From assembly GCF_006345805.1 (NCBI RefSeq), contig NC_043000.1:36890001-36954000 (forward strand): a stretch of DNA of 64,000 bases, given 5' to 3'. Positions 76 to 59,214 of the stretch are shown one piece after another. The first letter of the stretch is position 1. The number at the start of each line of letters is the position of its first letter. Both the position numbers and the translations under genes were made by a program. The stretch comes from Octopus sinensis. Taxonomy: Eukaryota. The notes under the pieces were generated by a model. The model made no database searches, was not told the origin of the DNA, and was given only the letters and a program-made list of their open reading frames with translations.

Positions 76-619
76 TCATGACGTAAAAGTCTCAGTCTAT
101 CAGTTCTGATAAACAAAGGCAAGGGAAGATAACTCATAAATTTAAATTCATTAGAATTGAAATAGCGAATCAACGGGAATCGAGAGATTCTGATTTGAAG
201 CTATGTAGGGGACAACTCTAGGCTTGTTCCAGCCGCGTTAAACTCCTCCCTGACCCGGTTACATTAATACTTACGGGTGTAACAGAAACACGTATTGAAA
301 GTTGATTAATGAACTCATTTGTATGACGAATTAAATGAGTGTTGTCAATCGGAGAGTATTAAGAGATGTCTTCTGCATGAAAATCATATTTAAGTTGGTG
401 GTAACATGATTAAAACAGTGAGCCAAAATATACCGCGGTCTTGCCAAGTCTCATTCACATTCAACTAAAATTTCTTCGACCAAATCGAAACACATTCCTC
501 TACTACTGATCCTTCGGAAACAGATAAGCAACTGAAATTATTAGTTTAGGCAATTACCACACAGACACACACACACACATATCTTATACCCAACCCTACA
601 AATAAAAAAATACAATTAC

Positions 620-2560
620 ACAATGGTTTAGGTCCCCTAACTTGTCCAATGAGAGCTCCACTGCAGTTATTCACGCAAGAAACAGGATCTAGAATACCCC
701 AAAACATTATCAGATTCTCCAACATCTAGTTGTTTACTCAGCAACGCAACTCTTGCAAAATCCCAACCTGAACCATGAAAGATGCCTCCGTACATCGATT
801 ACCCCTGAAGCTACACCACTTCCCAAATTGCAGCTGATCCTTCTGGTCGCTCGCCAAAAGAATCTCCAGCATAATAAAAATCACTTATCCGCTATTTCTC
901 AATGAAGACAGCTCTACAAGTAGAATTTCCGCCGGCGAAACATCCATCCGCTTTCGCTATTTACTTTGCTTCCAACTCCATATGCTCTCAGGGGAAAAAA
1001 AAAAACAAATCACCATAACAATCCTCTCTTTGCACCACCAAGTTCCTCAGCTTGCACAAAAACACATTGTGAAATGACCAACGGTCACTTCAAATCAACA
1101 AGAACACAAGCCTTGACTATATCCCTTCGATTACCCATATCTTGCTCAAGTACTTCAAAATTCTTCAGTCGAGCTCTCTCTCTCTCTCTGCAAGGAATAT
1201 GCGCTGAACTCTGGAAACACGCTACTGTGCATCTTAATCTCCATGAAGGTAACCCCTTTCCGACCCTGCCAACTATTCTTCGCCACACTTCCCGTATCCA
1301 AAAATCCTGGAGATTGCAACTAATAACGACTTTCTTCAGCATTTGGAATCGCTTTCATTGCTTAATGACCACAAGTACAGTTTTCAGAGAGAGTCACATC
1401 CATTGGGAACCTACTCTCTTATATCACTTTCTCATCTGAGACAAATCATGAGAAACCAATATTGACTTGAATATCAAATCTTCCGACGAGATCTGGCATG
1501 AGATTCTTCTATCGAATCTATCCTCCAATGAACTCCATCTGTTTCTTCTTATTTTTATCACTAACTTCATATCCATTCGCCCATTCTGCAGCGTGCCAAA
1601 CGCTAAAGAGAATCAGGTTCCTTCCTCCCACGATTTTCATGTACTTACACTGCTACTTGCAACACCGACCACTGATGCATAAACAAAAGGCAACAATTCA
1701 TTCCCCACTAACCTTCCCTAACAATGCCGAAACCTAGACACCACACGCCAAACCGGCAATCATTCCATGAACGCCGACCTCAAAAGTATCTTCCATTGGG
1801 GCCTTATCAATCTTGTCTGTTTGAGCAACAAAAATACAAGGACTATTCATTCGAAGAAAACATCACCGCAACATTCCCAAAAATTATTTTTGTTAGCAAA
1901 AGCAGGTTCATAGCTAGGAGTGCATCTCAAAGACCGAACCTTCAATTCGCAGCCAGAAGTTAGTCGGGTCCTCAACAATTAATGATACACTACAAAAATC
2001 AGGTGAAGCCCACAATGGAGTCTTAGACTTAAATCTGGGACATCATTGTTTCCGCGCACACAGACATACTAGACCTCATCCAATGAAAGGGTTACTCAAA
2101 AACTTGCACCTGTCTATGGCCCATAGGTATGTTGCCTCTTTTCCACCAGTACTATTATAACCTTCCCTTTTGGGAGCTGGCCCTCCCTCCCCACTCACAT
2201 CTATTCTCCTTTCCTTACTAATGCTGTATCCAACTTCCCACTAAGTCCCTTCCCTAGCTACTACGTCCGCTCATTTCTTCCAAGAACATCATACCACTAA
2301 ATATCTCTGTCTTGCCTTTGTCTTTCCTGTAGCTATCAACTCGTAATAGTTTAAGGAACACATTAATGGCATCGTCAATTTTCTTAGTAGTCGAAGATTT
2401 CCGAAGCCCGTGACCAATGACCATTCTTCTTCTCGACCCAGCAAGAGGACATAACTATCGTTGGAATACATTTGATCACAGTGCGATCCGAGACTAAACA
2501 GCTGTCAACATTCACTGAAGAACGAGGTTGTGGTTTATCCCCTCGTCTGTTCGGATTATG
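620..2560 (-). pseudogene. Heavily decayed putative LINE ORF1 remnant (DUF4283 / zf-CCHC_4-like motifs)
   Basis: Minus-strand frames with many stops give, in order, LVGRF (~1480), ...IVKACVLVDLK*PL (~1120-1078), FIEK*RISDFYYAG (~905-863) and QLQFGKW (~835-815). These resemble the L1 ORF1 motifs LVGRF, ARVxVxVDLxKPL, YERLxxFCYxCG and QxGxW. Confidence 0.35.
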
Positions 2561-2580
2561 CCTGCTTTTGATAAGCATAC

Positions 2581-2967
2581 ATAGGCGCAGGTGTGGCTGT
2601 AGGGTAAGAAACTTAGGAGCTGTGCGGTGCAGGCGTGACCGTGCGGTGCAGGCGTGGTTGTGCGGTGCAGGCGTGGCCGTTCAGAGCAGGCATGGCCGTG
2701 CGGTGCAGGCGTGGTTGTGTAAGCGTGACTGTGCGGTGCGGACATGGATGTGCGGTGCAGGCGTGGCCGTGCGGTGCAGGCGTGGCCGTGCGGTGCAGGC
2801 GTGGCCGTGCAGTGCAGGTGTGGCTGTACGGTAAAGCGTTTGCTTTCCAGCCACATGGTTTTGGGTTCAGTACTTTAGGTTCGGTACTTTGGGTATGTGT
2901 TTTTGACTAGACTCCAGCTTAACCAAAGCCTTGCGAGTGAATTTGATAGACGCAAACTAAAAGAAGT

Positions 2968-3021
<54 letters not shown>

Positions 3022-3240
3022 GTGTGTGTGTGTGTGTGTGTGTGTGACTACCTCCTAACAATCGTTGCTGGTATGTTTATAACTCCGTAACTTAGCGGTT
3101 CGGCAAAAGGCCGATAGAATAAATACCAAGCGTTACAATGAAATAGCAAGTACTACCGTCGATTCGTTCCACTAAAATTCTTCAAGGCAGTGCCCCAGTA
3201 TGGCCGCAGTCTAATGACTAGAACAACTAAAAGACAAAAG
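2581..3240 (+). mobile_element. Composite tRNA-derived SINE (family A/D): head, CORE-like body, internal (TA)n/(TG)n, CR1-type tail
   Basis: Head ggcgcaggtgtggctgt; body aaccaaagccttgcgagtga...aaagaagtcc; microsatellite 2973-3046; 3' part gtaacttagcggttcggcaaaa...ggcagtgccccagtatggccgcagtctaatgact. Homologous to 23125-23400 and 57636-58410. Confidence 0.85.
2622..2826 (+). repeat. 19-bp minisatellite (GTGCGGTGCAGGCGTGGCC)n, about 11 units, inside the SINE head
   Basis: Units start at 2622, 2641, 2660, 2679, 2698, 2717 (short), 2731, 2750, 2769, 2788 and 2807. Confidence 0.9.
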
Positions 3241-3929
3241 CTACCGGTCATAACTCCTCCTTCCTTATTTTTAGATACATTCACGGAAAATATTATCGCA
3301 ATGTGGCCTTCCTTACATGTAAAGCATGAAGTAGTTTGAAAGGACTGTGGGCTATTTCTAGCAATTTGAGCGACCACATACGGATTCCTTTGTAGACTTG
3401 TCTAATATTGTTTGAAAAACTAACAATCATTGGAACAATCAATGCTGGAAGCAGTGGCAAGGGAGGTAACGGCAACGACTAGTCAGTATGTGTGTGTGTG
3501 CGCGCGCGTGCGTGCGTGCATATATATATATATATATATATATGTTTGGATATACACGTGTGGATGGATGAATATAGGTATAGATATGTTTCTTTATTAG
3601 CCACACAGGGCTGCACACAGATAGAACAAATTACAAGGTAGAGCTTTTCTTTTGAAGGTAAAAAAAAGGGGGGGGGTGTTCGATCAAAAGGGATCGTAAA
3701 AGGAGAGAAAGAGGACAAAAAAAAGGGGGGTTAAAAAAGGGGGAGAGGAAAAAAATTTATCAATAGGGATCGTTATGAAGTGTAAAGGGGAGGACAGGTG
3801 AGGTTTACCCGTGGAAAGAAAAGCCTACGGAAAAGACCACGGTAACCTCGGTCAATGAAGTCACGTTATATTTCTTTCTTTTTCTTTTTTTTTTGCAAAT
3901 AAGCAACTCTCTGTATTAATTTTTATGGT

Positions 3930-6005
3930 TCATAGAATCATAGTCAAGGTGGCTTCGTCATTCATACGGGCCATCATTGCTACATTCACCCATCTTTTTT
4001 TAAAACATTCACTAGACAAAACTTGCCTCTCTACTCTCACTTTCCTCCTCAAGTGATACTTGAAGAAGTTGAGAGATTGACCAGAGAGGAAAGTGTTTGT
4101 CTCTAATCCTTTCAGGCGCGTCCACCAGATACATTCTTTTGCCATAGCCACAAGTATGATAAAAATAGCTCTTCCTTCCCGTTTGAAGGAAGGAGGCGTG
4201 ACGATATTAACGATAGACTCGGCTGATAAACCGACACGTCCCACACGTGACAGCAGTCGTTCGACATAAGCCCACAGGTGGGAAATTGCTGGACACTGAA
4301 CGATTGCGTGCAGAGCGGTTTCGTCGCTCTGCCCGCATCTCGGGCAGGTCGGCCCCGTGTTTCTCGAGCCATGCCTATAGAGCTTATCCCGAACGGGTAG
4401 CGCTTCTCGGTAGCACCGCCAGGCCAGGGATCTCTGGAAGTTGTCCATAGGTCCCGGGCCGAAAGTCGTTTGAAACAGGCGGGTCAGGTACTCCTCGTTG
4501 ATGAGAGATTGACCAGAGAGGAAAGTGTTTGTCTCCAATCCTTTCAGACGCGTCTACCAGATACATTCTTTCGCCATAGCCACAAGGATGATGAAACTAG
4601 CTTTTCCTTCCCGTTTGAGGGAAGGAGGCGTGACAATATTGACGATAGACTCAGCTGATAAACCGACTCGTCCCACACGTGACAGCAGTTGTTCGACACA
4701 AGCCCACAGGTCGGAAATTGTTGGACACTGCACGAGTGCGTGCAGAACGGTTTCGTCGCTCTGACCGCATCTCGGGCAGGTCGGCCCCGTGTTTCTCGAG
4801 CTTTGTCTGTAGAGCTTATCCCGAACGGGTAGCGCTTCTCGGTAGCACTGCCAGGCCAAGGATCTCTGGAAGTTGTCCATGGGCCCTGGCCCGAAAGTCG
4901 TCCTGAACAGGCGGGTCAGGTACTCCTCGTCGACGTCCAGGTTCGCCCCGAGCTCGTCGTCGTACCTCCCCTCCACTAATCCCCTATAGAATGCTTTGGT
5001 TGTGTTGAAGTCACTCAAGGTCGACCCGGGACGGCAGAGTTGCTTGAGAGCAACGCGACACTCGCGGTGTCATTCGCCCTTCCTCGGCCTCTTTTTGATC
5101 CACGACTGCAGTTCGGTCATGGAGACGAGCTGCGGGAAAGCGTGCCTCACAAACGGCGACCACACCTGTTCACCGTCGTCTACATAGAGCCAGAGATGTC
5201 GCAGTCTCAGCGCGTGTCTGCGCATCATCAACCACGGCATGCCCAGCCCTCCTTTTAACGGGTGTTGACAGCAAATGGATCGCCTGACCATCGGGACGCA
5301 TCCTTTTCACAAGAAGCGAAAGAGAATGCGTTGTAGTTTGGTGATGGTAGGGTCGGGACATCCTATGCTATCTCTGTCTACTGTCCTACACAGTATCCTA
5401 TCTAGATACGATCTCGACGACCCGATGCGGTTGCTCCATGTCCACGTTGGCGCATTCGGGTGGTCTAGTCGGAACCTGTCAGACAGTTGAAAGCGTCTGA
5501 GCAGGTCTCTGAGGCATTTGCATCCCCGTCTATTCCTATCTCTACCCACGTAGTCTACATGCGTGTCCAAGGTAGCATTCCAATCCCCCACTAAGAGTAA
5601 AGGACGAGACGTTCCCAAGAATACTTCTAGACGTTGAAAGAAATCCGCCCGACCTGTTAAGGGCGGTGCGTAGACTGATACGAGTCGAAAAGCGCACCCA
5701 TTGCTGCCGTCGACATCCAGGACGACCAGTCTACCCTCCGGGTCTACGAATATTGTCCTTACTTTGAGGTCCAGACTCTTGCGAAAAAGTACCGCGGTGC
5801 CACTACCGCCCATTCTCGGCAGACAGGGGGGAAAATAAATGTTGAACTGTCCGCCAAACATGGTCTTTAGGGCCCGCGGATTGTGGAGTCTGGTCTCACT
5901 TATGGCAATAATTTCTAACTTATGTGACTTTATGTCATTTAAGAGGTACCCTTGTTTCCAAGGGGACCCCAAGCCACGCGCATTTACACAACCAATCTTG
6001 ATCAT
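3930..6005 (-). pseudogene. Tx1 ORF2: APE endonuclease fused to the post-RT region, with a duplicated zinc-binding domain
   Basis: APE motifs VNARGL, ISETR, VSVYAP, LVGDWNA and SYLDRI. Then LQRILFRFL..GGLGMP, and CPRCGQSDETxxHAxVQCP twice. No RT core motifs lie in between. Confidence 0.9.
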
Positions 6006-8027
6006 AATCCTAATGAATTAGAATACAAGTGAAAGGAACAGAGGGTTACATACTGCTCGAAAGTTTTTGCTTTCTCCTCCGTTGGTTTGTCCTCGAGGAG
6101 ATCCCAGTACAGTTTCTTTGTGAGATATTTTTGGCATTTACCAACCGCACTGGGGAAAATGCCTTTGAGTGTGTGGTGCAGACTTTTGGAGATGTGTAAT
6201 ATTTTGATGTGGTCTGGTGGTGTTGTGTATGGGTGATTGTTTGTTTTTATGTCATCTTCTGTTATGCTTGTTTTTGATTGGATGTATTCCATCAAATTTG
6301 TGTTTTTGGTGTCTATAGCTGTGAGCATGTTTGCTGTATATATTTTTGTGGTGTTGGTGTGGCTGTTGTTTGTGTTGGGTTTTGAAATGTCTTCGGGAGA
6401 TGTATTTCCCCCTGCTTTGTTCGTGTTTGCATTTGGTTTGGTTGTGTTTCTGCTCTTTATTTTCCTTCTTTTTGTAGCTATTTGCCATTCCTCATTGGTT
6501 TCATCTTCCGACGAAATTTCTGAGGAATCAGTGGGGGGTAGGGGTATGTTGCAGGCTTCTATGTATGTCTGTAAGTGGTTGTGTTGTTGGTTGTTGAGTG
6601 TTTGTGTGTGTTGAGTGCGGTATAAGGGGTGGGGGATCAGTTTTTGTGTGTTTTCCTTGTTTTTCTGTTCCTTTGGTTCCTGCTGTTGTTGGTGGTGTTG
6701 GTATTTTTTCAGGTGTTGAGTGGTTTTTGGTTGATGACGGATTAGCTTGGTGTGCTTCTCTTGTCTTCTGTGTTGATGGTGGTGTGGGTAGTAGAGCTTT
6801 TTTTCCGGAGTGCTTTGGTTGTGGTAGTGGTTGTTGTTGCTATTGGTGTGCTGTGGTTGGGCACGTCTTTTTCAGGTGTGTTTCGCTTCCACACAAATAG
6901 CAGCGTGGTCGCCTGCCCTCTACCACTATATAGAGTTTGTAGCTTCCTGGCAGTTCTATAGTGGTGGGTATCTTCTCTCTTGTTGCTTCATCCAATTGAA
7001 GCAGGAATTCGATTGATTTGCCCACATAGTCTTTCTCTCCTAGAACAGCGATTTCAAGGATGTTTGTCTCTGACATTGTCATTTCAAAGCAGATGGCAGA
7101 GACTAACCATTGTGTTTCGACATCAAGCGGTATATTTTTTATTTGGACTTTTGTGACCCTTTTGTTTAAATAGACTGATATCATTACCAAGTCGTCCGAA
7201 TGCAGCTCCAATGTGGAAAAACGTTTTGCTGAACTTTCGTTGAGGAAACCTACTTGGACTGTGCCAAATTTATTTCCCCAACTGATATATTCCTTGGAGT
7301 CCCATACAGGACGAAGGCATTTTTCGATTTTTTCCTGCGGTGCATTTTCTGTTCTTCTTGTTTTCTTGTTTATTACTTTATAAATTATTGTTTTTTTTTG
7401 TGTGTTTTCCACGATGTGTTGTGGAATGTGAAGGTGCAATTTGTCTCCTTCTTTTGTAAAGAGTGATTTTGTGCGGTTTATTTCCTATGTGGTGAATTTT
7501 ACAATTGTTCTTTTTTGTTTTGTCACATCCGCAAAATTCGTTTTAAATTTGACGGTGTTAGAAGCAGGAGTGTTAGTTGTATCAGTTGAAGTCGTGGTAG
7601 TGGTGTTGGTATTGGCGGTGTTAGCCACAGGAGGGTTAGTAGTAGCATTTGAAGTCGTAGTGGTGGTGTTGGTGTTGGCGGTGTTGTTTTTGGTAGGCGG
7701 CTTTGTGCCCATTTCGTTGTTGTTGTTGGTGGTGGTGGTACTGGCATTCATGTTTTCGTCTGTATTCATTTTTGAAATCCCTTTCTCCGTCCTTTTATCA
7801 TCGACGAGTGGTGTAGGGAGTGAGGGGAAATCTAAGTTAATGTCTTTGGTCGCGGTGATGGTGAATGCGACGTTAGTTTTGTTGTTGTTGGTGGTGGTTG
7901 TGGTGGTGATGGTGGTGACAGCGGTGTTCAAGCTGTGATGTTTAGCAGCTAGTGGTAGCAATAGTGTTTCGCTACCGTTCTGCATGACTGGCGGGCTAGC
8001 CACGTGGTTTCTAGTTGCCATTTTCAA
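6002..8027 (-). pseudogene. Tx1 ORF1 (gag-like): Thr/Asn-rich N-terminus and CCHC knuckle, interrupted by stops and frameshift
   Basis: ORF pieces 7485..8027, 6840..7439 (GRRPRCYLCGSETHLKKTC) and 6002..6328. Its stop overlaps the ORF2 start as ATGA at 6005-6002. Confidence 0.85.
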
Positions 8028-8237
8028 AATGAAAAATGGCTAAAAAACCAACGAAAGTTTTGAAAGTTTCTGGTAATTTCGCCCATACAGGGGCGGAATT
8101 CTACGTGAGTAATTCTCAGGTTTTTTGGTAAATGAACTTGCACAACGATTAAAACAAAATATTTGACAAGGAGTTTTAAACATGTAAAAGTGGCCAACTT
8201 ACGTGGAGCCGATGTGACTAGCGTCCGTCCATGACTG

Positions 8238-8322
8238 TAGATAGATAGATAAATAGAGATAGATAGATAGATAGACAAACAGATAAATAGATAGACAGAC
8301 ATAAATAGATAGACAGACATAA

Positions 8323-8353
<31 letters not shown>

Positions 8354-8490
8354 AATAGATAGACAGACAGATAAATAGATAGACAGACACACAGACATAG
8401 ATAAATAGATAGACAGACAGACAGATATATATATATATATATATATATATAACGAGATAGATATATATAGACAGATATAGATAGATGTAT
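8238..8490. repeat. (GATA)n/(GACA)n/(TA)n compound microsatellite
   Basis: Direct reading. Confidence 0.95.
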
Positions 8491-8930
8491 GTGTGTTTGT
8501 GTAGACGGTGATGAGGGTGATGGTGGAGTCTGAGCTACAGTCGTAAGAACTTTCTAATGAATCAGCCATCCGTAAAAAAAACGGCCACTAAAACCAAAAA
8601 CGACGTAAATATGGAAATAAGAAAAAAACTAACGTAAAATACAAGTAACAAAAGCAAAAGTGAATCTAAAAGCTGAAGCTAAAAGCTAACTGGTCCAGCA
8701 CAAAAGGGGTGGGTGCTATTTTAGATACTTCTGATTACTGGACTGGCCACGTGATCCTGGGTAGAACACAATAAGTGCCGGAGATGCTGTAAATATCCTA
8801 TTATCCCCAAAGTAGCTATTTTGCCACTATTCAATAGAGCAACAGTTCAGCCGTTTTAGCTCACTTTTCGCGATTTGTTCCAATATTCCTCTAGCGGCAG
8901 GCAGCCATAGATTCTACTTATATTGATTGA

Positions 8931-23490: not shown

Positions 23491-25359
23491 TGTGTAGCCA
23501 TGCATATAGTGTACATGTGTGGGTACAGAACACTTTTTCATTTGGGTTAATGAAAATTATTGTATTCAAGTTTGACATCCATCATACATCCACCCAATCA
23601 TACCTGTGTCCATCCATCCATGTATCATTATAAAAATGCTTCAGTCTCTCAATGCGTTCGCTCCAGAGATGCTTAGTAACCCCATGTTGTAGCTCAATGC
23701 AAGACCAGTCAGAATTGATGCAAACACGCTGTTTACATTCTTCTAGCTCTGACTTGATCGTGTTGTAAAGTTATTACAGGAGCCGTTTCTAATAAATCAC
23801 CTCTCTTTCACTGAACATCACATGAAACTAGGAAATCTACTGCAAATGGAAAATATTCAAATGAAAGACGTACATTAGAGCACAATAAAACACATTTAAT
23901 AATATAGCATGACCATACACACATGTACATACATATAAACATGTATACGCTTGTAAGTCTACATATTTATATATGCACACACTAGCATGCATACACAAGG
24001 ATACATATACACAAGTATACATGCCACTCTCGAATGCATACATTCATAAATACGTATGTATTCATTCATATACACGCGCACACAGTCACAACACCTACAT
24101 AAACACGCTTATAGCCATATACATGAGCACAAAAACGTGTATATCCATACATACTATTTTAGATATAATTGAAAATATGGCTGTGTTTTAGCTTTCTTTT
24201 TTATTAGCATTTCTTGTTTTCCTCTGATTTCCTTGAAGTTTCTGGAAAAGCTAACTTTCTCAATTTTCCTGAGAAATAGCAAGGAAATCATACGAAAATA
24301 TGAAAAGATTTTGTAAAAAAATATACCCATGACACAGTCGTCTTCTCAATATAACATTGTGAAAAGAAAAGCTGTTTACCATTTCGTGTATGTGTATTTG
24401 TGCCTGTTAATGTTATAAATGCTTGCTTGTATGGTGGAGACAATGTGCAGATATGTGTTTGTGAATAAGGCTCTGTAGCTACCTATACAGAGATCTATCA
24501 TATATATGGCTATGTGTTACATACATACATACGAGGTGGTATGAAAACGTTGGTTCTGTAGCGTATCAACAGTTGGTAGCACACGGTTGTGTGAGCAGTG
24601 AGAGCTAGCGGAGATCATCAGGCAGTGTGCCGAGTGATATCGCTGTGTTTACTTTGCAAGTTGCGATATTCGTGCTTTTTGTGATCGCGTGTATGCTGTA
24701 GTCTGCGATTTTTGTCATGGACAGGAAGTTGGAATAAAAAACCAACGGGAAATTTTACGTTAAACTTGGGAAGTCTGCTACAGAGACATTTGAACATGCA
24801 TCGGCAAGTTTACAGCAACGGGGCAATGGGTCGTAAGTAATGTTTCGAATGGCACGGGCCATTCAAAAGCCTAAGATCGTCTCCGGAAGACAATAAGCGA
24901 TCTAGAAGACCTGCCACGAGTTTCACCCTAGGAAATGTATTGTGCATCAAGAATTCGCCCCCCACCCCCAGGACAATCAAAAGTTATACTGCGGCGTTTT
25001 GAAGCGTCTAAGGGTGGACATTCGGCAAAAGTAGCGCCATCTATGGAGCCGGAAGAATTGGATTCTTCATGACGACAGTGCACCCTGTCGCTGAGTTCTC
25101 AAGTTTCTCACCAAAACAGGATTGCTTTTGCATCCACCCTAATCTTCAGATTTAGCAACGTGTAGACGAAAATATAGCTCAAAAGCCGCCGTTTTAATGC
25201 CGTTGTCGAGACTAAGAGTGAATCGCAGAAGGTCCTCGGCGCGCTCACGGAAAACGACTACCAGACCGCATTCCAAGAGTGGCAAGAACGCTAGGACCGG
25301 TGTAGTGCTGCGCAGGGTAACTATTTCGAAGGAGATGATGTTAAAACTTAGCTAAATAA

Positions 25360-25600
25360 TACAGTTCTATATTTAAGAGATGAGAAATTATGTACATTAT
25401 TCACATTTGACCGACATTTGTCCTCATCTTGTTTGTTAACACAACGTTTCGGCTGATATACCCTTCAGCCTTCCTTGGGAAAATTTCGAACCTGGGTTCT
25501 CATTCCTAAGGTATTTTTCGATGTTATTATTATTATTCACCTCACTGCTTGTAATCGAAGCTACTAATCCCAAGATTCCGAATTCGATTCTAAGCAGTGA

Positions 25601-25648
<48 letters not shown>

Positions 25649-25784
25649 CAACAACATCGAAAATTACCTTAGGAATGAGAACCCAGGTTCAAAATTTCCC
25701 CAAGACATCTGATGAAGGCTGGAGGGTATATCACCCAAAACCTTGTATTAACAACAAACAAGATGAGGACAATGTAAATAATGT
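25360..25784. mobile_element. SINE-E inverted (head-to-head) pair inserted as one unit
   Basis: Left arm 25360-25559 is the reverse complement of the family 3' part; right arm 25560-25784 is forward. TSD tagctaaataa at 25349-25359 and 25785-25795. Confidence 0.85.
25704..25749 (+). ncRNA. Degenerate hammerhead motif (SINE-E right arm)
   Basis: gacat-CTGATGA-a-ggctg..caccc-aaaa-cc-tt-gtatt. CTGATGA is intact; GAAA and the stems are mutated. Confidence 0.55.
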
Positions 25785-26278
25785 TAGCTAAATAAGTTTG
25801 TTTTTTTATTAGACATAACTTGTTTAATGAATCTTTTGATAGATATATACATATAGTGCAATTTAAAAGATTATTGCATCGCACGACCAATAATCAGTAT
25901 TAAAACCCCATATTTATCTCCATGTGTGAAGGAAAACGGTATTAAGGTGCACGTATCATTTGGTTGGAATCGGTCCTTGGGTATGTCACAGAGTGAATAT
26001 ACAAAACAAGACGAGTGAGATTGTTCACAAAAAGACTTAGTTACACAATCTTACGTATATTTCATTAAGAATGATAGTTTAATAATCAAACTGTATTGTC
26101 AAATCTGCAGAGATGTTTAACTCTCAATTTTAATTTTATTGAGATTATTGACAATGTTGCTAGATAAGCAATGAGCTCAGAACTACTGATACGCAGTGTT
26201 TCTTCTACTTACATTAGTTTTGATTTGGTTATTTATAAATGGCTTTTTCTTCTGTTGTCTGTTACCTGGTGTTAGTAG

Positions 26279-44189: not shown

Positions 44190-45599
44190 CATCTTACATG
44201 TACTTGTACATATGTATACCTTTACAGGTATACGTACATATATGCATACAATACAAACATTGTGACTTCAACGTTTCACGGAGTTTGGGAATTATTGAAG
44301 CAACCTAAATAAACTACACGGTCAGCGAATGTTAGAACTCACTGTCAATAAGACAGAACCTGGAGAGTACACGTGCACTGGTCTGCTTATTTAATATCTG
44401 CTGTTGTATGCATAAAAACACTAGTTTTTCTTTGCGTGTGTGTACGTACACATGCAAAACGTGTGTATGTGAATGGAGAGAGAAACATACCTACATTATC
44501 GTGTGTAGTTGTTTTGACCTAAGTTAAACCATGATTGAGAAGAGAACTTTTATCAAAAGCATTCCGCTTGTGACCATCTCACCTATTTTTAGATATATAT
44601 TTTGGTCTCTATTATTCAATATCAAGTGAATTATTGACCCTTTCAGCGGCGCTTATTTTTCGTACTAAATTTTACTATGGAGTAAATCCATATATTTTAG
44701 TCTTCAATGCATTTATAAATAAAAATTATTAAATACATTCGAGAAATCTAAATGTCTATCATCTTTATAGAATCTCATTGAGTGAGCGACTGGACAATAG
44801 TTTCAAATACGATAACATTCTCGTCAGCAGACGATTACTCTGCATTAAGTGACCACTATAAAATTATATTTTAAGTCAATATTATTAGCTGTATAAACAT
44901 ATCAGAAAGATCGATTCGAATATTGAACAGAATTTTATTTAGTAGGACAGCAAAAAACGTGCCAAATATTCAAATATGTTTTACTGAGTTAGTTATATAC
45001 CTCATGCCATTGGCTTTAAATAGGATTTTACAGAGGTCAGTTCATCGAGGGTAAACGATCGCTGACGAGAAGGTAATGACACTTGAAACTGTAGTTCAGT
45101 CAATTTCTCATTCATTGACCTCAGGGAGGTTATGTAAACATGGAATTATAGGCTTCCGGCTGTCTAATGGATCTAATATCTTTCATTTATAAATGCAGTT
45201 CGGCTAAAAATGTATAGATTTACCATGACTTAATATTTAAAAAGATAGCTATGATTTGGAGATTTATTCGTTATGTTTAGCTGGTGGACAAACTGTGTAG
45301 GGAATCCATAGGTCAAGCGTTGTATGCATCGGTGCAGAGACTGAGTTGCGTAGGAGTCAGAGGGAATGTGTGTACATGTGCATGTATTATGAAAGACAAG
45401 TAGGAGAAACACAAGATGCTGTTTATATCTTGTATTTATCATACGTTCTCCTACATTTACTCTGTATATCATAACCAAATGATAATATATAGACATAATT
45501 AAATATAAGTATACAAGAAAAAGGGTGTACTGATATAAGTAGGTGTAATAGAATAAAAATAAGGCATATAAATACATCTACACACAGACACACACACAC

Positions 45600-47046: not shown

Positions 47047-49025
47047 GATTTGATTGATTGATTGATTGATTCCAGTTTCAGCTCATGAGCTGTGGCTATG
47101 CTGGGGCACCGCCATTTGGTGTTGCTACTTGGTTTCACTTCATGGAGGCTTTCTAGCAACTGCTATTTGGTGCATGAGAGAGTTCGATGCAGCTGCCCCT
47201 CCTGCCGTGAAGTTGGTTCATCTGGGACACCTGACAGGAAGAGATCCAGCTCCATTTTAAAGACATCTGTATCCACCCCATGCAGGTCTCTCAGGTTCAT
47301 CGGGAGGATATTGAAGAGCTGTGGGCCTCGGAAGCCCAGGCTATCACAGAATCTTGTCCTACATCTTGATGGCAAGTTTGGAGTCCTAGGCACCACGCAG
47401 TGGCGCCCAGTTCTGGCGTTTGCGTAACTCTCGATGCCAAAGTTCAGGACACTTCCCTCCAGGATCTTCCAGATGTATATTATGGCATATCTTTCCCGCC
47501 TACGCTCCAGGGAATATAATTTTAATCTCTTGAGTCTTCTCCCAGTAGCTTACATTCTGCATAAGGCTATCTTCTTCGTGTAGCTTCGTTGGATCGCCTC
47601 AAGTTCTGTGATCAACTTGACACTGGATGGTGACCATAGCTGAGAGCAATAGTCAAAGTGACTTAGGACAAGTGTCTTCAGAGGACCATCATGGTTTCTT
47701 GTTCCTTGTTTAAAGGTTCTAAGAATCCATCCAGCCAGCGTCTGCATTTCACTGTCAGTTTAGCAACATGTACATGAAAGGTCGCGTCATCACTCATGTG
47801 AATCCAGGTCACGCACTGATTGTGCCTCTGGGATTGCAATCCCTCCGGGTCCAGTGTATTCCTTGGGTATTGCATTCGTTTTGCATGCTGATAGTATAAA
47901 GCTTGAAACTTTTCAGCATTGAAACTGCATGCTATTCTTTTCAGCCCACTTGTAAATTCGTCCAGCTCATATTGCAGGTGTTTAGTGTCCTCAGGGTCTG
48001 TATTGCCTGTGAAACTTTTGTATCATCTGCATAACTTGTGATCGTGGCTCTCCGCGTGGCTGAGGGCATGTCTGAGAGGGGCCATTATGAACAGTAGTGG
48101 TCCCAAAACAGTGCCCTGTGGAACACGCTCACTATTTGCGTGCTAATGGAAGTGGCCCCATTGGCTACTACCACCTGACTTCTATTCTTCAGAAAGTCGT
48201 GAAGCCATTCTCCTAGTTTTCCAACTATGCCAAGATCACGCAGTTTGTGACATATCATTCCATGATCGACTTTATCGAAGGCCTTTACGAAGTCGAGATA
48301 TATGACTTCCACATTTGAGTGGTTGAGCAGTTGTTTCAGCACCCAGTCATAGTGCTGCAGGAGCTGAGTTAAGCAGCTTCTTCCTGGTCGGAAACCATCT
48401 TGGGTGTCAGGCAGCAAGTCATTTTCTTCAAGGAAGGTGATTAGTTTCCTTCTGACTATTCGTTCCATGACCTTGCTGATGTGTGAGGTCAGAGAGATAG
48501 GTCTGTAGTTCTTGGCCTCCGCTCTGCTACCTCCTTTATGAATAGGGCATATTTTACCTTCCTTCAGTTTTCTTGGAAGTTTGCCAGCTGCAAGGAAGCT
48601 CTGAAAGAGGAACTGCAGTGGTCTTGCTAAGACTCCTCTTACATACTTTTAGGAGGATTGCCGGGAATCCATCGGGGCAATAAGCTTGAGTCTATTTTCA
48701 TTCATCTATAGCCTTTATTACATCATCTTCCTTTATATCGATGTAATTTAACGTCGCCGCCTCTGATTCTATATCTGCAGTGGTAAAAAAGTCAGTTGGA
48801 TTGCTGATTTGGAAATGCCCAGGGGTGGTGAAAACACTCTTGAATTGTTCATTCAGTATTTCACTTACCCTCATTGGTTTTCCTGTGAGTGTGCCATCCT
48901 TTTCAAGGAGTGGCCCTATCCTACAGTGCACCGTAGCTGTTTCTTTGGCATACCTGTAGAAAGCTCTGGGGTTAGTTTTTATGTTGTCTATAGCCCAGGC
49001 TTCTTTGTCTGCTCTTTCCTTCTCA
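47047..49025 (-). mobile_element. 5'-truncated CR1 LINE (RT domain frameshifted) with an (AATC)n 3' tail
   Basis: QDGFRPGRSCLTQLL, IYLDFVKAFDKVDH, SYADDTK, HFDYCSQLWSP. 3' end GGCGGTGCCCCAGCATAGCCACAGCTCATGAGCTGAAAC followed by (AATC)n. Confidence 0.92.
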
Positions 49026-56885: not shown

Positions 56886-58064
56886 ACTATTGTCAGTATT
56901 CAAGGGCTAATTCATTATGTTGCAAAATATGTAATCGCTTCCATATACTCTGAAAAAAAAAAAAACTAGTTTTTATGGAAAGGCTTTATTCGGAGTGGAT
57001 GGGGCTTTAATGTCCCACAACACAAATACTTGCTTAGACTTGCAAAATTCAGCAAATGTCTTTTACTGGTGAGATTGAACTAGCTTCTTTACAATATTGT
57101 ATTTTAATGGAAATGGCTTAAATAAATTGGGTTCAGACTTTCGAAACTTGTCCAATACCAAGAAGAAAGAATTGTATGATACACACCATCTGTAAAGAGG
57201 AACAAAACATATTCTAGCATTGTTTCTGTATGATGAAGCTGGTATTTATCAATTTGAGAACCACCGGTTTAGACACCATGATGTAAATATGACTACTATT
57301 TCTAGCAGACCAAGTGACTGCATAGATTCTTTCTACATTTGTGACACAAAACATTCCGTTGTGTAGTTAATATTTCTATAAGAAAATTTTTAAAATACCG
57401 GGTAATATCTGATTAAGGTTTGACTCCACCAGAGCTGAGACTGGAGATAAAAAAATAAGTATTTTAAACAAAAATGAAAACAACCTATTCCGTTATAGTT
57501 GTCTGAAATATTAGATGTATTTTGCAGAAATACATTTAATATTCCAACATCTTATATTTATGTAAAATCAATTAATGCGAAAAGAAATGTTCTGGAATTT
57601 CAAATTACTTTTCATATTCATAATACAGGCGAGGATAGGCGCAGGCGTGGCTGTGTGGTAAGAAGCTTGCTTCCCAACCACATGTTTCCGGGTTCTGTCC
57701 CACTGCATGGCATCTTGGGCAAGTGTCTTCTACTATAGCCTCAGGCCCACCAAAGCTTTGTTAATGGATTTTTGTAAACGGAAACTGAAAGAAGCCCGTC
57801 AAGCCGACTAAAACATCTTCGAGATGTGCTTAGTTCATTACAAGTCTTTTTTATTCTTATCCTAAAACACATTAAAAAACTGTCATATTAAGCAACTAAA
57901 TACCTATTCTTGCCCAACCCTGAGAGAGAGAAAGAAAGTGTGTGTCCTTCACCACCGCTTTATAACAATGTTGGTGTGTTTACATCATTGTAACTTAACG
58001 TTTCGGCAAAAGATACCGATAGAGTAAGTATCCGTCTTTAAAAAAATAAGCACTAAGGTCGATT

Positions 58065-58325
58065 CATTATTTACATTTGAGGGGTATTTGTCCTCATCTT
58101 GTTTGTTTTTAACACAGCGTTTCGGCTGATATACCCATCAGCCTTCATCAGGTGTCTTGGGGAAAATTTCGAACCGAGGTCCTCATTCCTAAGGTATTTT
58201 TCAATATTATTATTATTCAGGTCGCTGCCTTGGAATCGAACTTGGAGTCTCGGGGTTAGTAGCCCGCGCTCTTAACCACTACGTCATATGCCCGTGAGCA
58301 TATAGAACTGTAATATAGAACTGTA
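58065..58325 (-). mobile_element. Full-length SINE-E: tRNA-like head, (AAT)n, body, hammerhead and 3' region
   Basis: Head 58293-58219 has A box tgacgtagtgg, loop ctactaa and B box gttcgattcc. Body matches both arms at 25360-25784. Confidence 0.88.
58111..58156 (-). ncRNA. Minimal type I hammerhead ribozyme motif (one core substitution)
   Basis: gacac-CTGATGA-a-ggctgat-gggtat-atcagcc-GAAA-cg-c-t-gtgtt: 5-bp stem I and perfect 7-bp stem II. U16.1 is C here but T in the 25438-25470 copy. Confidence 0.75.
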
Positions 58326-59214
58326 AGATCTATTTATTCGACTAAAATTCAAGGCGGTGCTCCAGCATGGCCGTAGTCTAATGACTGAAACAAGCAAAAG
58401 ATCAAAATAACAAAAAATTCCAGTATTTTCGAAGAGGGGAAAAAAATGGATATTGAACGCTTATGCATTCTTTGGTTCATTAAGGGTTGCGGTGTAACTG
58501 ATGAGGTGAATATTCCTAACAGCCACGACCGTGTTAATAACAAGACACTAACAGAAGGAGAAAAATCTATTCCAGGTCCATGTAGTTGTTAGCAGTGTAA
58601 TGTATTTTAGTGTTAATGTGGTTGGAAGAGCAGAGTGTAAGGCTCTTTAAATTACTTATTACGTTCGGTGTTGAAATCCAGCCGGGTATGCCCAAGACTA
58701 AATTCAGTTCCCCTAAATATTAAAAAAAACAAAACCTCTTTTGATAACAGTTCAAAAAGCAAAACCCTTTACGAAGTTATACAATTCGTGTTGGTCATCA
58801 GTAAATAACAAAAACTAATTCATCACGTGTATGAACACACTGAATTCTAGACTGACAAATCCTGAATGTACTTAGTAGCAAGGTTTTTGTTTTATCGAAT
58901 CTATAGTTTTGCTAAACTGACGATTTGTATAAAAAAAAAAACATTAATATAGAATGAAAAGAAAAATGGATGATCATTTTCCTTAAAACTCTAAATATCT
59001 AGCTTTGCCGGCGGCGCCTGTGCGGTTTCGCTTCACATCTGACGCTTTCTGTTTTCCAACGTTTCATTTTAAAACAAAAAATTATTGTTTATATGTTCTC
59101 ATTACGAACCTCACTGTCAATATCTATACAGATGATACGACATTTAAAATATTTTTTTAAAGTATGAGATACTAAAGATAAGTTTCCCAAGTACAGAATA
59201 TTCAACCAAAGACC

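What the first reader, a model, noticed from the sequence alone, without database searches (positions are those of the whole stretch)
25349..25795. SINE-E inserted as an inverted pair with a 34-nt extra tail and an 11-12 bp TSD, a Penelope-type signature
Seen: the ~425-bp fold-back unit is bounded by tagctaaataa (25349-25359 and 25785-25795) inside a mariner end, so it is a single insertion event. The forward arm stops at ...GTAAATAATGT (25784). The independent copy at 58065 stops at ...GTAAATAATG, within 1 nt of the same point. The inverted arm extends exactly 34 nt further (25360-25393). That extension contains agatgag (25378-25384), complementary to ctcatct (25423-25429). Known: Penelope-like elements produce inverted partial repeats in which one copy carries a short ~30-40 nt tail. 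Inference: SINE-E uses Penelope (GIY-YIG/RT) machinery rather than a LINE, and Penelope remnants occur in this window.
Basis: partly seen in the sequence, partly recalled or inferred. Interest (0 to 1): 0.8.

Follow-up and report, generated by a model that had tools for sequence, protein, structure and literature searches.

The report
SINE that inserts as Penelope-style inverted pairs
A short, tRNA-headed repeat of this octopus genome carries a Penelope-type hammerhead ribozyme and usually lands as two back-to-back inverted copies, one 34 bases longer than the other, inside a single target-site duplication; that is the footprint of Penelope-like retrotransposition, not of ordinary LINE-driven SINE copying, but the autonomous Penelope partner was not found.

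Summary
Window 25360-25783/4 is one insertion. It has a 12-bp target-site duplication, TTAGCTAAATAA. Eleven of 12 paralogous copies of the host repeat show the uninterrupted site. The insert is two head-to-head, 5'-truncated copies of a ~268-nt SINE. The left arm has 34 extra 3' bases; the right arm stops at ...AATAATG(T).

This is the family's normal form genome-wide. About 25,000 arms exist and about half carry the tail. In an unbiased sample of 40 arms, 25 lie in inverted pairs. Over three samples the pairs are 53 long+short, 1 long+long and 1 short+short. Target duplications of 8-15 bp (most often 12-13) enclose the whole pair.

The SINE consensus has a hammerhead with all the features described for Penelope minimal hammerheads. 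The short end lies in the apical loop of a 3' hairpin. This matches the two reverse-transcription start sites measured for a lizard Penelope element.

Two points are unsupported. No Penelope remnant was found in the window. None of about 40 GIY-YIG/RT loci sampled from the genome shares the SINE's 3' module. Use of Penelope machinery is therefore well supported by structure (about 0.7) but not proven.

The parts
25348..25359 (.). left copy of the 12-bp target-site duplication TTAGCTAAATAA
   Evidence: Exact direct repeat. Paralogous empty sites hold a single copy.
25360..25393 (-). the 34-nt 'tail', which is the family's full-length 3' terminus, read here as its reverse complement
   Evidence: Present in about half of all genomic arms. 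It holds the 3' strand of the terminal hairpin.
25360..25559 (-). long-ended arm: SINE copy on the minus strand, 5'-truncated inside the tRNA-like head (profile positions 59-274)
   Evidence: blastn and nhmmer
25378..25429 (-). 3' hairpin of the SINE RNA: stem from agatgag (25378-84) and ctcatct (25423-29), 9 bp in the family consensus. The short end maps into its apical loop.
   Evidence: Sequence. The fold of an intact copy gives the same hairpin.
25438..25472 (-). hammerhead remnant of the long arm (helix II, GAAA, helix III/I). The CUGAUGA box is deleted.
   Evidence: compared with the consensus
25560..25784 (+). short-ended arm: SINE copy on the plus strand, 5'-truncated at the anticodon-loop region, with an expanded internal (AAT)n at 25605-25642. 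It ends at ...GTAAATAATG(T).
25704..25749 (+). decayed hammerhead of the short arm (CUGAUGA is kept; GAAA has become AAAA; helix II is damaged)
25784..25795 (.). right copy of the target-site duplication. Its first T could equally be the last base of the arm.
58056..58064 (.). probable left target duplication of the second insertion (AGGTCGATT)
   Evidence: Matches 7 of 9 bases at 58326-58334. Both flanks are consecutive parts of one copy of another abundant SINE.
58065..58299 (-). second SINE copy: full length, with the tRNA-like head at 58220-58299, and short-ended
58111..58156 (-). hammerhead motif of the second copy with an intact core: GACAC-CUGAUGA-A-helix II-GAA-ACG.U.. and the helix I partner GUGUU
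   Evidence: features from PMC4209133
58300..58325 (+). two copies of the last 13 nt of the long tail (ATATAGAACTGTA) in the opposite orientation: the remains of an extremely 5'-truncated long-ended partner arm
   Evidence: Partner arms of 46-60 nt occur elsewhere (L088, L091, L110, L112).
58326..58334 (.). probable right target duplication of the second insertion (AGATCTATT)

Best explanation
**What it is.** SINE-E is a non-autonomous retroposon of about 268 nt in an octopus genome. From 5' to 3' it has four parts:
- a tRNA-like head with A- and B-box motifs;
- an internal (AAT)n run;
- a ~60-nt linker;
- a ~130-nt 3' module, made of a Penelope-type minimal hammerhead followed by a hairpin and a 34-nt terminal tail.

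**How it most likely inserts (inferred).** It is copied into the genome by the RT/GIY-YIG enzyme of a Penelope-like element.
1. The endonuclease makes a staggered double-strand cut 8-15 bp apart in A+T-rich DNA.
2. Both exposed 3' ends prime reverse transcription of SINE RNA.
3. One cDNA starts at the very 3' end of the RNA and gives the 'long' arm.
4. The other cDNA starts 34 nt upstream, in the apical loop of the 3' hairpin, just after a GTAAATAAT unit, and gives the 'short' arm.
5. Both cDNAs stop early. They are joined head-to-head, often at the internal (AAT)n.

The product is an inverted pair inside one target-site duplication. The window's unit at 25348-25795 is one such event. The copy at 58065 is another, in which the long arm was cut down to 13-26 nt.

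**Shown:** the architecture, its frequency, the target duplications, the empty site and the hammerhead features.

**Inferred:** the enzyme, priming on both strands, and which strand uses which start site.
For: 1. One event. The TSD is exact and 11 paralogous sites are uninterrupted.
2. Genome-wide rule.
   - Pattern counts are 12,234 for the junction plus tail and 25,097 for the 35-mer just upstream of the short end, with 0 in reversed-pattern controls.
   - In the unbiased sample of 40 arms, 14 are long, 26 are short and 25 lie in inverted pairs.
   - Among 36 full-length long copies, 22 have an upstream inverted arm.
   - Automated classing of pairs gives 53 long+short, 1 long+long and 1 short+short. 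Tail scores are cleanly bimodal.
   - If ends were chosen independently, 17 or more of 18 mixed pairs has probability about 7e-5.
3. TSDs around the whole pair. The median best match is 12 nt, against 7 for flanks taken from different loci. 77% are at least 9 nt, against 14.5% in the control.
4. Hammerhead. The consensus and copy 2 have CUGAUGA, an unpaired base between positions 9 and 10.1, G10.1-C11.1, GAAA, a palindromic ACGU in place of helix III, and a 5-bp helix I. These are exactly the traits listed for PLE minimal hammerheads (PMC4209133).
5. Match to biochemistry. The lizard element PAc starts reverse transcription at two sites in a stem-loop. Its 'tail' is the stretch between them. 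It extends both DNA strands and prefers AT-rich ATT sites (PMC11167929). Here the two ends are 34 nt apart, the short end lies in the hairpin loop, and TSDs are 75% A+T, starting A-rich and ending T-rich.
6. No 3' poly(A) or microsatellite tail follows either kind of end.
7. Target preference. A second paralog of the host repeat has an independent mini-pair in the opposite orientation with the same 12-bp TSD. The expected number by chance is about 0.01 or less for a site present 443 times as an exact 20-mer.
Against: - No autonomous Penelope-like element with this 3' module was found. About 40 GIY-YIG loci were read 1.2-1.5 kb past the endonuclease, and some in full. None resembles the SINE.
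- Only one of those loci showed a convincing hammerhead, and that one belongs to an unrelated small element.
- The abundant RT/GIY-YIG families of this genome therefore look different from the SINE's presumed partner.
- Rfam's hammerhead models do not score the motif, even at E up to 10.
- In vitro, PAc showed no difference in start site between the two strands. That does not predict the near-obligate long+short pairing seen here.
- About 37% of arms have no detectable partner arm.
- The hairpin fold is not significantly better than shuffles (z = -1.36).
Confidence: 0.7

Rival explanations
1. An ordinary LINE-dependent SINE of the 'stringent' type, as with L2 or CR1 partners. The LINE's RT recognises the 3' hairpin and starts on a short 3' repeat. 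The inverted pairs would then arise from twin priming during LINE-type target-primed reverse transcription.
For: A 3' hairpin followed by a short repeated unit, (GTAAATAAT) in 1-3 copies, recalls stringent LINE/SINE tails. TSDs of about 12 bp and 5' truncation are also typical of LINE-mediated insertion. LINEs are abundant here, and the window holds two.
Against: - Twin priming inverts the 5' part of one RNA. It does not give two arms that both contain the 3' end.
- No LINE system is known to give such pairs in about 60% of insertions, or to pair a terminal start with an internal start 34 nt away in about 95% of pairs.
- The module contains a Penelope-type hammerhead.
- The window's LINE fragments share nothing with the SINE.
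Confidence: 0.12
2. The module is mobilised by some other reverse transcriptase through a retrozyme-like route: hammerhead self-cleavage, a circular or multimeric RNA, then reverse transcription. It would not use a GIY-YIG Penelope enzyme in particular.
For: phmmer with the module's open frame finds about 200 short ORFs. Several, from one other eukaryotic assembly (ENA ERZ21867824), contain the module as head-to-tail repeats of 43 residues (129 nt), which is the organisation of animal retrozymes.
Against: - In this genome no tail-to-hammerhead tandem junction exists (0 matches).
- Copies have defined linear ends and a tRNA-like head.
- Animal retrozymes are themselves now argued to be Penelope dependants (bioRxiv 10.64898/2026.07.22.740005). 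This rival therefore largely collapses into the main explanation.
Confidence: 0.08
3. A fold-back or MITE-type DNA transposon whose terminal inverted repeats are the two arms, moved by a transposase that makes a fixed target duplication.
For: The unit looks like a hairpin flanked by a direct repeat. Many full fold-back copies exist.
Against: - The inner ends of the arms differ in every locus, from full length down to 13 nt.
- The outer ends are systematically unequal.
- TSD length varies from 8 to 15 bp or more.
- About 37% of arms stand alone, and many of those are full-length with a tRNA-like head.
- None of this fits cut-and-paste of a fixed unit.
Confidence: 0.03
4. Two independent SINE insertions nested at one spot, or a later local inverted duplication, so that the pairing would be secondary.
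For: A site preference exists, so repeated hits at one site are conceivable. One locus (L077) is a large palindrome that includes its flanks, i.e. a real secondary duplication or an assembly artefact.
Against: - A single TSD encloses both arms and no internal TSD is present.
- Arms of a pair are no more alike than arms from different loci (0.910 against 0.903), which excludes recent duplication.
- The 53:1:1 long+short rule cannot come from independent hits.
Confidence: 0.03

Closest known systems
Penelope-like elements (Penelope/Poseidon, Neptune, Nematis clades): insertion structure and terminal repeats
   Same: - An inverted 5'-truncated copy lies next to the main copy.
- A 30-40-bp 'tail' is present at one end only.
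- A minimal hammerhead sits in the terminal region.
- Targets are A+T-rich.
- Reverse transcription has two start sites in or next to a stem-loop.
(PMC8557442, PMC11167929, PMC4209133)
   Different: - SINE-E has no ORF, is about 268 nt long, and begins with a tRNA-like polymerase III-type head.
- No direct (tandem) terminal repeats are seen.
- No RT/GIY-YIG element of this genome was found to share its 3' module.
Schistosome Sm-alpha / Sj-alpha SINE-like elements
   Same: Short polymerase III-type repeats that carry a type I hammerhead (reviewed in PMC6765202).
   Different: - They are described mainly as tandem or satellite-like arrays with a canonical hammerhead.
- In the papers I could read, no inverted-pair, one-sided-tail insertion footprint is reported for them.
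- Sequence relatedness to SINE-E was not tested.
Animal non-LTR retrozymes
   Same: Non-autonomous, hammerhead-bearing units of 130-400 nt proposed to depend on Penelope-like elements (bioRxiv 10.64898/2026.07.22.740005). Relatives of the SINE-E module occur as 129-nt tandem units in another assembly.
   Different: In this genome the module is never tandem. It is fused to a tRNA-like head and is dispersed with target duplications.
Non-autonomous Chlamys elements (e.g. MRC1) of Chlamydomonas
   Same: Non-coding elements that share 3' ends with autonomous Penelope-like elements and reproduce their odd insertion structures (PMC8557442).
   Different: They belong to the green-algal Chlamys clade with an N-terminal endonuclease. 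They have no hammerhead and no tRNA-like head, and their arrangement is mostly head-to-tail.
Classical tRNA-derived SINEs with LINE partners (CORE, V, Deu, Meta, Ceph superfamilies; octopus OR1/OR2/OK)
   Same: A tRNA-like head with A and B boxes, a modular body, tens of thousands of 5'-truncated copies, and target duplications.
   Different: - The 3' end is neither A-rich nor a simple repeat.
- Insertions are mostly inverted pairs with unequal ends.
- The 3' module is a ribozyme plus hairpin, not a LINE 3' UTR.

Membership tests
Penelope-like insertion footprint (non-autonomous dependant of a PLE) | Inverted, 5'-truncated copy directly adjacent, so that the 3' ends face outward | tested here: met
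   25 of 40 unbiased arms and 22 of 36 full-length long copies are in such pairs.
Penelope-like insertion footprint (non-autonomous dependant of a PLE) | A 30-40-bp terminal extension ('tail') present at only one end of the insertion | tested here: met
   The tail is 34 nt. Pairs are 53 long+short, 1 long+long and 1 short+short. About half of about 25,000 arms carry it.
Penelope-like insertion footprint (non-autonomous dependant of a PLE) | One target-site duplication around the whole complex unit | tested here: met
   The median match is 12 nt against 7 in controls. The window's site is shown empty in 11 paralogs.
Penelope-like insertion footprint (non-autonomous dependant of a PLE) | 3' end shared with an autonomous RT + GIY-YIG element of the same genome | tested here: inconclusive
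   About 40 GIY-YIG loci of at least 10 sequence groups show no similarity. The search tool scores only the best 150 of 4,846 candidates, so rarer or older families were not seen.
Penelope-like insertion footprint (non-autonomous dependant of a PLE) | Mobilisation by the PLE enzyme, with reverse transcription starting at the two mapped sites | not testable with these tools
   This needs biochemistry or a retrotransposition assay.
PLE-type minimal hammerhead ribozyme | Core CUGANGA ... GAAA; an unpaired base between positions 9 and 10.1; a G10.1-C11.1 pair; palindromic 15.2-16.2 with little or no helix III; a helix I of 4-5 bp | tested here: met
   All are present in the family consensus and in window copy 58111-58156, judged against PMC4209133. 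Rfam hammerhead models give no hit. That is the expected result, because a helix III is lacking.
PLE-type minimal hammerhead ribozyme | Self-cleavage (as a dimer or with protein help) | not testable with these tools
Both copies in the 25360-25784 unit are mutated.
tRNA-derived SINE | 5' head derived from a tRNA with polymerase III A and B boxes | tested here: inconclusive
   TGGCGTAGTGG and GAGTTCGATTCC lie at tRNA-like spacing, and D and anticodon arms can be drawn by eye. ARAGORN and the Rfam tRNA model do not call the head.
tRNA-derived SINE | 3' end shared with, and mobilisation by, a LINE; an A-rich or simple-repeat tail | tested here: not met
   Neither kind of end has an A-rich or microsatellite tail after it. 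LINE fragments in the window show no similarity. A whole-genome LINE library was not available.
Animal non-LTR retrozyme | Head-to-tail tandem arrays of hammerhead-bearing monomers | tested here: not met
   There are 0 tail-to-hammerhead junctions with a gap of 0-20 nt in the genome.
Fold-back / MITE DNA transposon | Fixed terminal inverted repeats and a fixed-length target duplication | tested here: not met
   Inner junctions vary, outer ends are unequal, and TSDs run from 8 to 15 bp or more.

The most novel reading that the evidence does not exclude
SINE-E would be a true SINE-type parasite of Penelope-like elements: a polymerase III tRNA-like head fused to a Penelope terminal module. That would extend the SINE/LINE partnership to the third class of retrotransposons. 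Its roughly 15,000 insertions would be a natural record of Penelope integration. That record shows something the in vitro work did not. The two DNA strands are almost always primed at two different RNA sites, one terminal and one in the hairpin loop 34 nt upstream. This implies an ordered, asymmetric two-strand mechanism. There may also be a preference for targets that resemble the element's own GTAAATAA loop motif.
Probability: 0.45. Interest if true: 0.8.

Novelty: new variant of a known kind. Interest (0 to 1): 0.68.

Why it matters
- **Mechanism.** How Penelope-like elements integrate is the least understood retrotransposition mechanism. Their own copies are long, few and hard to assemble. 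A 268-nt dependant with more than 10,000 insertions gives thousands of readable junctions: start sites, 5' joints, target sites and strand asymmetry.
- **A testable constraint.** The near-obligate pairing of one terminal and one internal start site can be tested directly with purified enzyme.
- **Annotation.** These pairs are easily mistaken for MITEs or hairpin-forming repeats. Octopus SINEs make up about 12% of the genome and most are unclassified (PMC13282606).
- **Classification.** If the partnership is confirmed, the textbook definition of SINEs as dependants of LINEs needs widening.

Tried and rejected
1. Rfam, gathering thresholds on the whole window and E up to 10 on two intact copies: no hammerhead or tRNA hit, only spurious microRNA matches on microsatellites.
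2. Partner search by GIY-YIG (PF01541) in the genome's own sequence. I read 3' flanks or whole elements of about 40 loci with blastn, an nhmmer profile of the SINE and a hammerhead regular expression. Nothing related turned up.
3. Idea that the module is the 5' end of a Penelope ORF. One frame is open for 53 codons to the element's end. phmmer against 1.8 billion proteins found only short spurious ORFs and no RT protein of about 800 residues.
4. An alternative 5' partner of the module (L093/L121) was followed 4.5 kb upstream. It is a ~580-nt non-coding element, not a Penelope ORF.
5. Fetching DNA for the tandem-module ORFs of the other assembly failed because the sample file was too large.
6. 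Tandem (retrozyme-like) junctions in this genome: none.
7. Same-template test. Arms of a pair are barely more alike than unrelated arms (0.910 against 0.903), so the test cannot tell one RNA from two.
8. Pfam on the degraded host-repeat fragments: no hit.
9. A possible hammerhead-like inverted repeat at window 44682-45223 is not convincing.
10. A phage-database search was irrelevant.

Note: a majority-rule consensus was made in scripts only for the 268-nt non-coding SINE. No consensus of any RT-encoding element was built.
Full report
**1. The observation**

The region reads as the first-stage reader said. TTAGCTAAATAA stands at 25348-25359 and again at 25784-25795. Between the two copies lie two arms that are reverse complements of each other.

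A profile built from 36 genomic copies places the arms as follows:
- The left arm, 25360-25559, lies on the minus strand at profile positions 59-274, which reaches the family's full 3' end.
- The right arm, 25560-25783/4, lies on the plus strand at positions 36-239.
- The right arm therefore stops 34-35 nt short, at ...GTAAATAATG(T).

The copy at 58065 begins with the reverse complement of ...GTAAATAATG.

I tested whether the unit is one insertion by looking for empty sites. The left flank belongs to a repeat with thousands of copies. In 11 of 12 paralogs fetched, the sequence runs ...AACTTAGGTAAATAA|GTTATTTTTATTAAACATAACTAG... without interruption. That is the window's two flanks joined with a single copy of the 12-mer. 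The fold-back is therefore one insertion with a 12-bp target-site duplication (TSD).

The host repeat has a mariner-like transposase C-terminus by eye (..YFEGDDVKT, then a stop). Pfam did not confirm this on the broken fragments.

**2. What the repeat is**

Full-length copies are about 268 nt long. They contain, in order:
- a tRNA-like head with A-box and B-box motifs at tRNA spacing, which ARAGORN and Rfam do not call as a tRNA;
- an internal (AAT)n;
- a linker;
- a ~130-nt 3' module.

The module starts with GACAC-CUGAUGA-A-GGCUG(G)...(U)CAGCC-GAA-ACGU-U, followed by GUGUU. This motif has:
- the hammerhead core;
- an unpaired base between positions 9 and 10.1;
- a G10.1-C11.1 pair;
- a palindromic ACGU in place of helix III;
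- a 5-bp helix I.

These are exactly the traits Cervera and de la Pena list for the minimal hammerheads of Penelope-like elements (PMC4209133). The minimum-energy fold of an intact copy recovers helices I and II. It also gives a 9-bp 3' hairpin (AGAUGAGGA/UCCUCAUCU) whose apical loop is AAUAAUG. The short end therefore falls at the edge of that loop, and the tail supplies the 3' strand of the hairpin. The fold is not significantly better than shuffles (z = -1.36).

The motif is intact in window copy 2 (58111-58156) and decayed in both arms of the 25360 unit. A frame-translated peptide of the module is 90% identical to an Octopus bimaculoides 'uncharacterized protein'. The genome is therefore an octopus.

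**3. The architecture is the rule for the family**

Whole-genome pattern counts give 12,234 matches to the 37-mer that spans the short-end/tail junction. They give 25,097 matches to a 35-mer just upstream of the short end. Both allow up to 3 mismatches, and reversed-pattern controls give 0. About half of all arms therefore carry the tail.

I read three samples.

*Sample S1* is the best matches to the window's fold-back, so it is biased towards pairs. It holds 20 distinct loci. All are inverted pairs or remnants of pairs, and 18 are classed long+short.

*Sample A* is the best 36 matches to a single full-length long copy.
- 22 have an upstream inverted arm. Of these 22, classes 18 as long+short, 1 as long+long (L069, whose paralog L070 carries a deletion) and 1 as ambiguous.
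- One locus, L077, is a large palindrome that includes its flanks.
- 13 have no inverted arm.

*Sample B* is unbiased with respect to tail and partner. It is the first 40 exact matches of the 35-mer on contig 1.
- 14 arms are long and 26 are short.
- 25 of the 40 sit in inverted pairs.
- Of the pairs whose two ends can be read, 17 are long+short and 1 is short+short (L100).
- 7 have partner arms cut by nested insertions, microsatellites or the locus edge.
- 15 have no detectable partner.

Scoring the 40-55 nt after each short-end position against the tail gives a cleanly bimodal distribution, at most 9 or at least 23, with four intermediates. The automated tally over all samples is 53 long+short, 1 long+long, 1 short+short and 2 unresolved. 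If the two ends were chosen independently, mixed pairs should be about half. Getting 17 or more of 18 has probability about 7e-5.

TSDs enclose the whole pair. The best match between the two outer flanks (at most 1 mismatch) has median 12 nt, against 7 when the flanks come from different loci. 77% reach 9 nt, against 14.5% in the control. Most TSDs are 9-15 bp.

Arms of a pair are no more alike than arms of different loci (0.910 against 0.903). Pairs are therefore not recent local duplications.

Partner arms can be as short as 46-60 nt (L088, L091, L110, L112). In window copy 2 the partner is only two copies of the last 13 nt of the tail (58300-58325). That copy lies inside another abundant octopus SINE, with a degenerate 9-bp duplication at 58056-64 and 58326-34.

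The unit GTAAATAAT occurs one to three times before both kinds of end. Neither kind of end is followed by poly(A) or a microsatellite.

**4. Comparison with what is known**

Craig et al. 2021 (PMC8557442) describe the hallmark of Penelope-like insertions:
- strong 5' truncation;
- an inverted 5'-truncated copy adjacent to the main copy;

Frangieh et al. 2024 (PMC11167929) purified a lizard element and reported that:
- it cuts and extends both DNA strands;
- it starts reverse transcription at two sites in a stem-loop, with no homology to the target;
- the tail is the stretch between the two sites;
- it prefers AT-rich targets cut after ATT.

SINE-E fits each of these points. It has two ends 34 nt apart around a hairpin and inverted arms inside one TSD. 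Its TSDs are 75% A+T and tend to start with A and end with T. This last trend is modest, because TSD boundaries are fuzzy by 1-2 nt.

In the library searched I found no paper describing a tRNA-headed SINE with this footprint. The nearest are:
- the schistosome Sm-alpha/Sj-alpha hammerhead SINE-like repeats (PMC6765202);
- animal non-LTR retrozymes, now argued to be Penelope dependants (bioRxiv 10.64898/2026.07.22.740005);
- non-autonomous Chlamys elements.

The absence of a report is a statement about the papers I could search. It does not cover Repbase or Dfam.

**5. What is missing**

The autonomous partner was not found. PF01541 finds at least 149 GIY-YIG places in the genome, with open frames of up to 883 codons. 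I read about 40 of them, either whole (L043, L080) or 1.2-1.5 kb beyond the endonuclease. By mutual similarity they fall into at least 10 groups. None matches the SINE by blastn or by the nhmmer profile. None shows a convincing hammerhead.

The one clear hammerhead met on the way, L039:747-1173, belongs to another small inverted-pair element inside an (AT)n tract.

The claim that Penelope remnants lie in the window is not supported. Two full-length RT/GIY-YIG proteins give no tblastn hit there. The window's RT-bearing fragments are LINE-type: an AP endonuclease plus zf-RVT at 3930-6017, and an RT at 48085-48648 with a LINE-like motif.

The module does not form tandem arrays in this genome. Relatives in another assembly do form them.

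**6. Extra finding: a shared target**

The twelfth paralog of the host repeat (L136, contig 8) carries its own SINE-E mini-pair at the same place with the same 12-bp TSD, TTAGGTAAATAA. Its short arm is on the left and its long arm on the right, which is the opposite orientation to the window. Its truncation points also differ, so it is an independent event.

The exact 20-mer site occurs 443 times, and the occupied-junction pattern once. With roughly 15,000 events in 2.7 Gb, chance predicts about 0.01 or fewer hits at this position across the whole repeat family. Two were seen. The target contains GTAAATAA, the motif of the element's own hairpin loop. That recalls reports that the Penelope endonuclease recognises its own tail region. 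It is a lead, not a result.

**7. Verdict**

- The Penelope-type footprint is real, family-wide and statistically solid.
- The ribozyme is of the Penelope kind.
- The enzyme is inferred, not shown.
- The remark about Penelope remnants in the window is wrong.

I put the Penelope-machinery explanation at about 0.7. The main rival is a LINE partner with an unusual form of twin priming, at about 0.12.

The case is best filed as a new variant of a known kind: a SINE-type dependant of Penelope-like elements. Its high copy number exposes a near-obligate asymmetry of the two priming sites.

Noticed in passing
L136 (G000:C8:54891380-54892250), locus positions 88-251: An independent SINE-E mini-pair of about 140 nt sits in another copy of the same host repeat. 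It has the identical 12-bp duplication TTAGGTAAATAA but the opposite orientation to the window's insertion. This suggests a target preference for a site that resembles the element's own GTAAATAA loop motif.
   Followed up: partly
L039:747-1173: A different small element forms a near-perfect inverted pair (204-nt arms, 99% complementary) inside an (AT)n tract. Each arm carries a Penelope-type hammerhead (CUGAUGA ... CGAAA-CGAUCG). It is young and unrelated in sequence to SINE-E.
   Followed up: partly
L048, L055, L062, L071, L087, L108, L117 (about 100 nt upstream of the SINE-E head): The same sequence (...ttagatttataagccctaaaattcactccataattgcccac) precedes the head in 7 of about 76 loci, next to both long and short copies. 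Read in reverse it looks like a diverged tRNA-like head. It may be a composite family or a recurrent hetero-pair with another SINE.
   Followed up: no
L093 and L121 (first ~440 nt), L123:4380-4541: The SINE-E 3' module (from the (AAT)n onward) is also fused to a different ~580-nt non-coding 5' part shared by two loci (88% identical). The module is therefore used by more than one non-autonomous family.
   Followed up: partly
window 57647-58030 and 58335-58401: A copy of the very abundant ~430-nt octopus SINE (GTGGCTGTGTGGTAAGTAGC...GGTTCAGTCCCACTGCG...) is the target of the second SINE-E insertion. The same SINE interrupts partner arms in L095 and L103.
   Followed up: partly
proteins P0002, P0003, P0005 (ENA assembly ERZ21867824): Predicted ORFs from another eukaryotic assembly contain two or three head-to-tail repeats of a 43-residue unit (129 nt). 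The unit is homologous to the SINE-E hammerhead-to-tail module, so the arrangement is retrozyme-like. The DNA could not be fetched.
   Followed up: partly
L043 (G000:C6:82396800-82402000), 260-3975: The most abundant RT/GIY-YIG family sampled here is a ~3.7-kb element with an upstream 250-codon ORF and a 764-codon RT-endonuclease ORF. This copy is bounded by (AT)n on both sides. No hammerhead, terminal repeat or tail was seen in this copy.
   Followed up: partly
window 3930-8587 (-) and 48085-48648 (-): The first is a LINE with an AP endonuclease, RT region and zf-RVT domain. The second is a separate LINE-type RT fragment. Neither shares sequence with SINE-E.
   Followed up: partly
all SINE-E arms, e.g. 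L085, L088, L100, L114: The 9-nt unit GTAAATAAT just before the short end is present in one to three copies, in both long-ended and short-ended arms. This may reflect template slippage at initiation or variation among source genes.
   Followed up: partly
window 44682-45223: Inverted repeat of 61-nt arms (75% complementary) around sequences that hold CTGACGAG...GAAAC on both strands. It is not convincing as a hammerhead.
   Followed up: no
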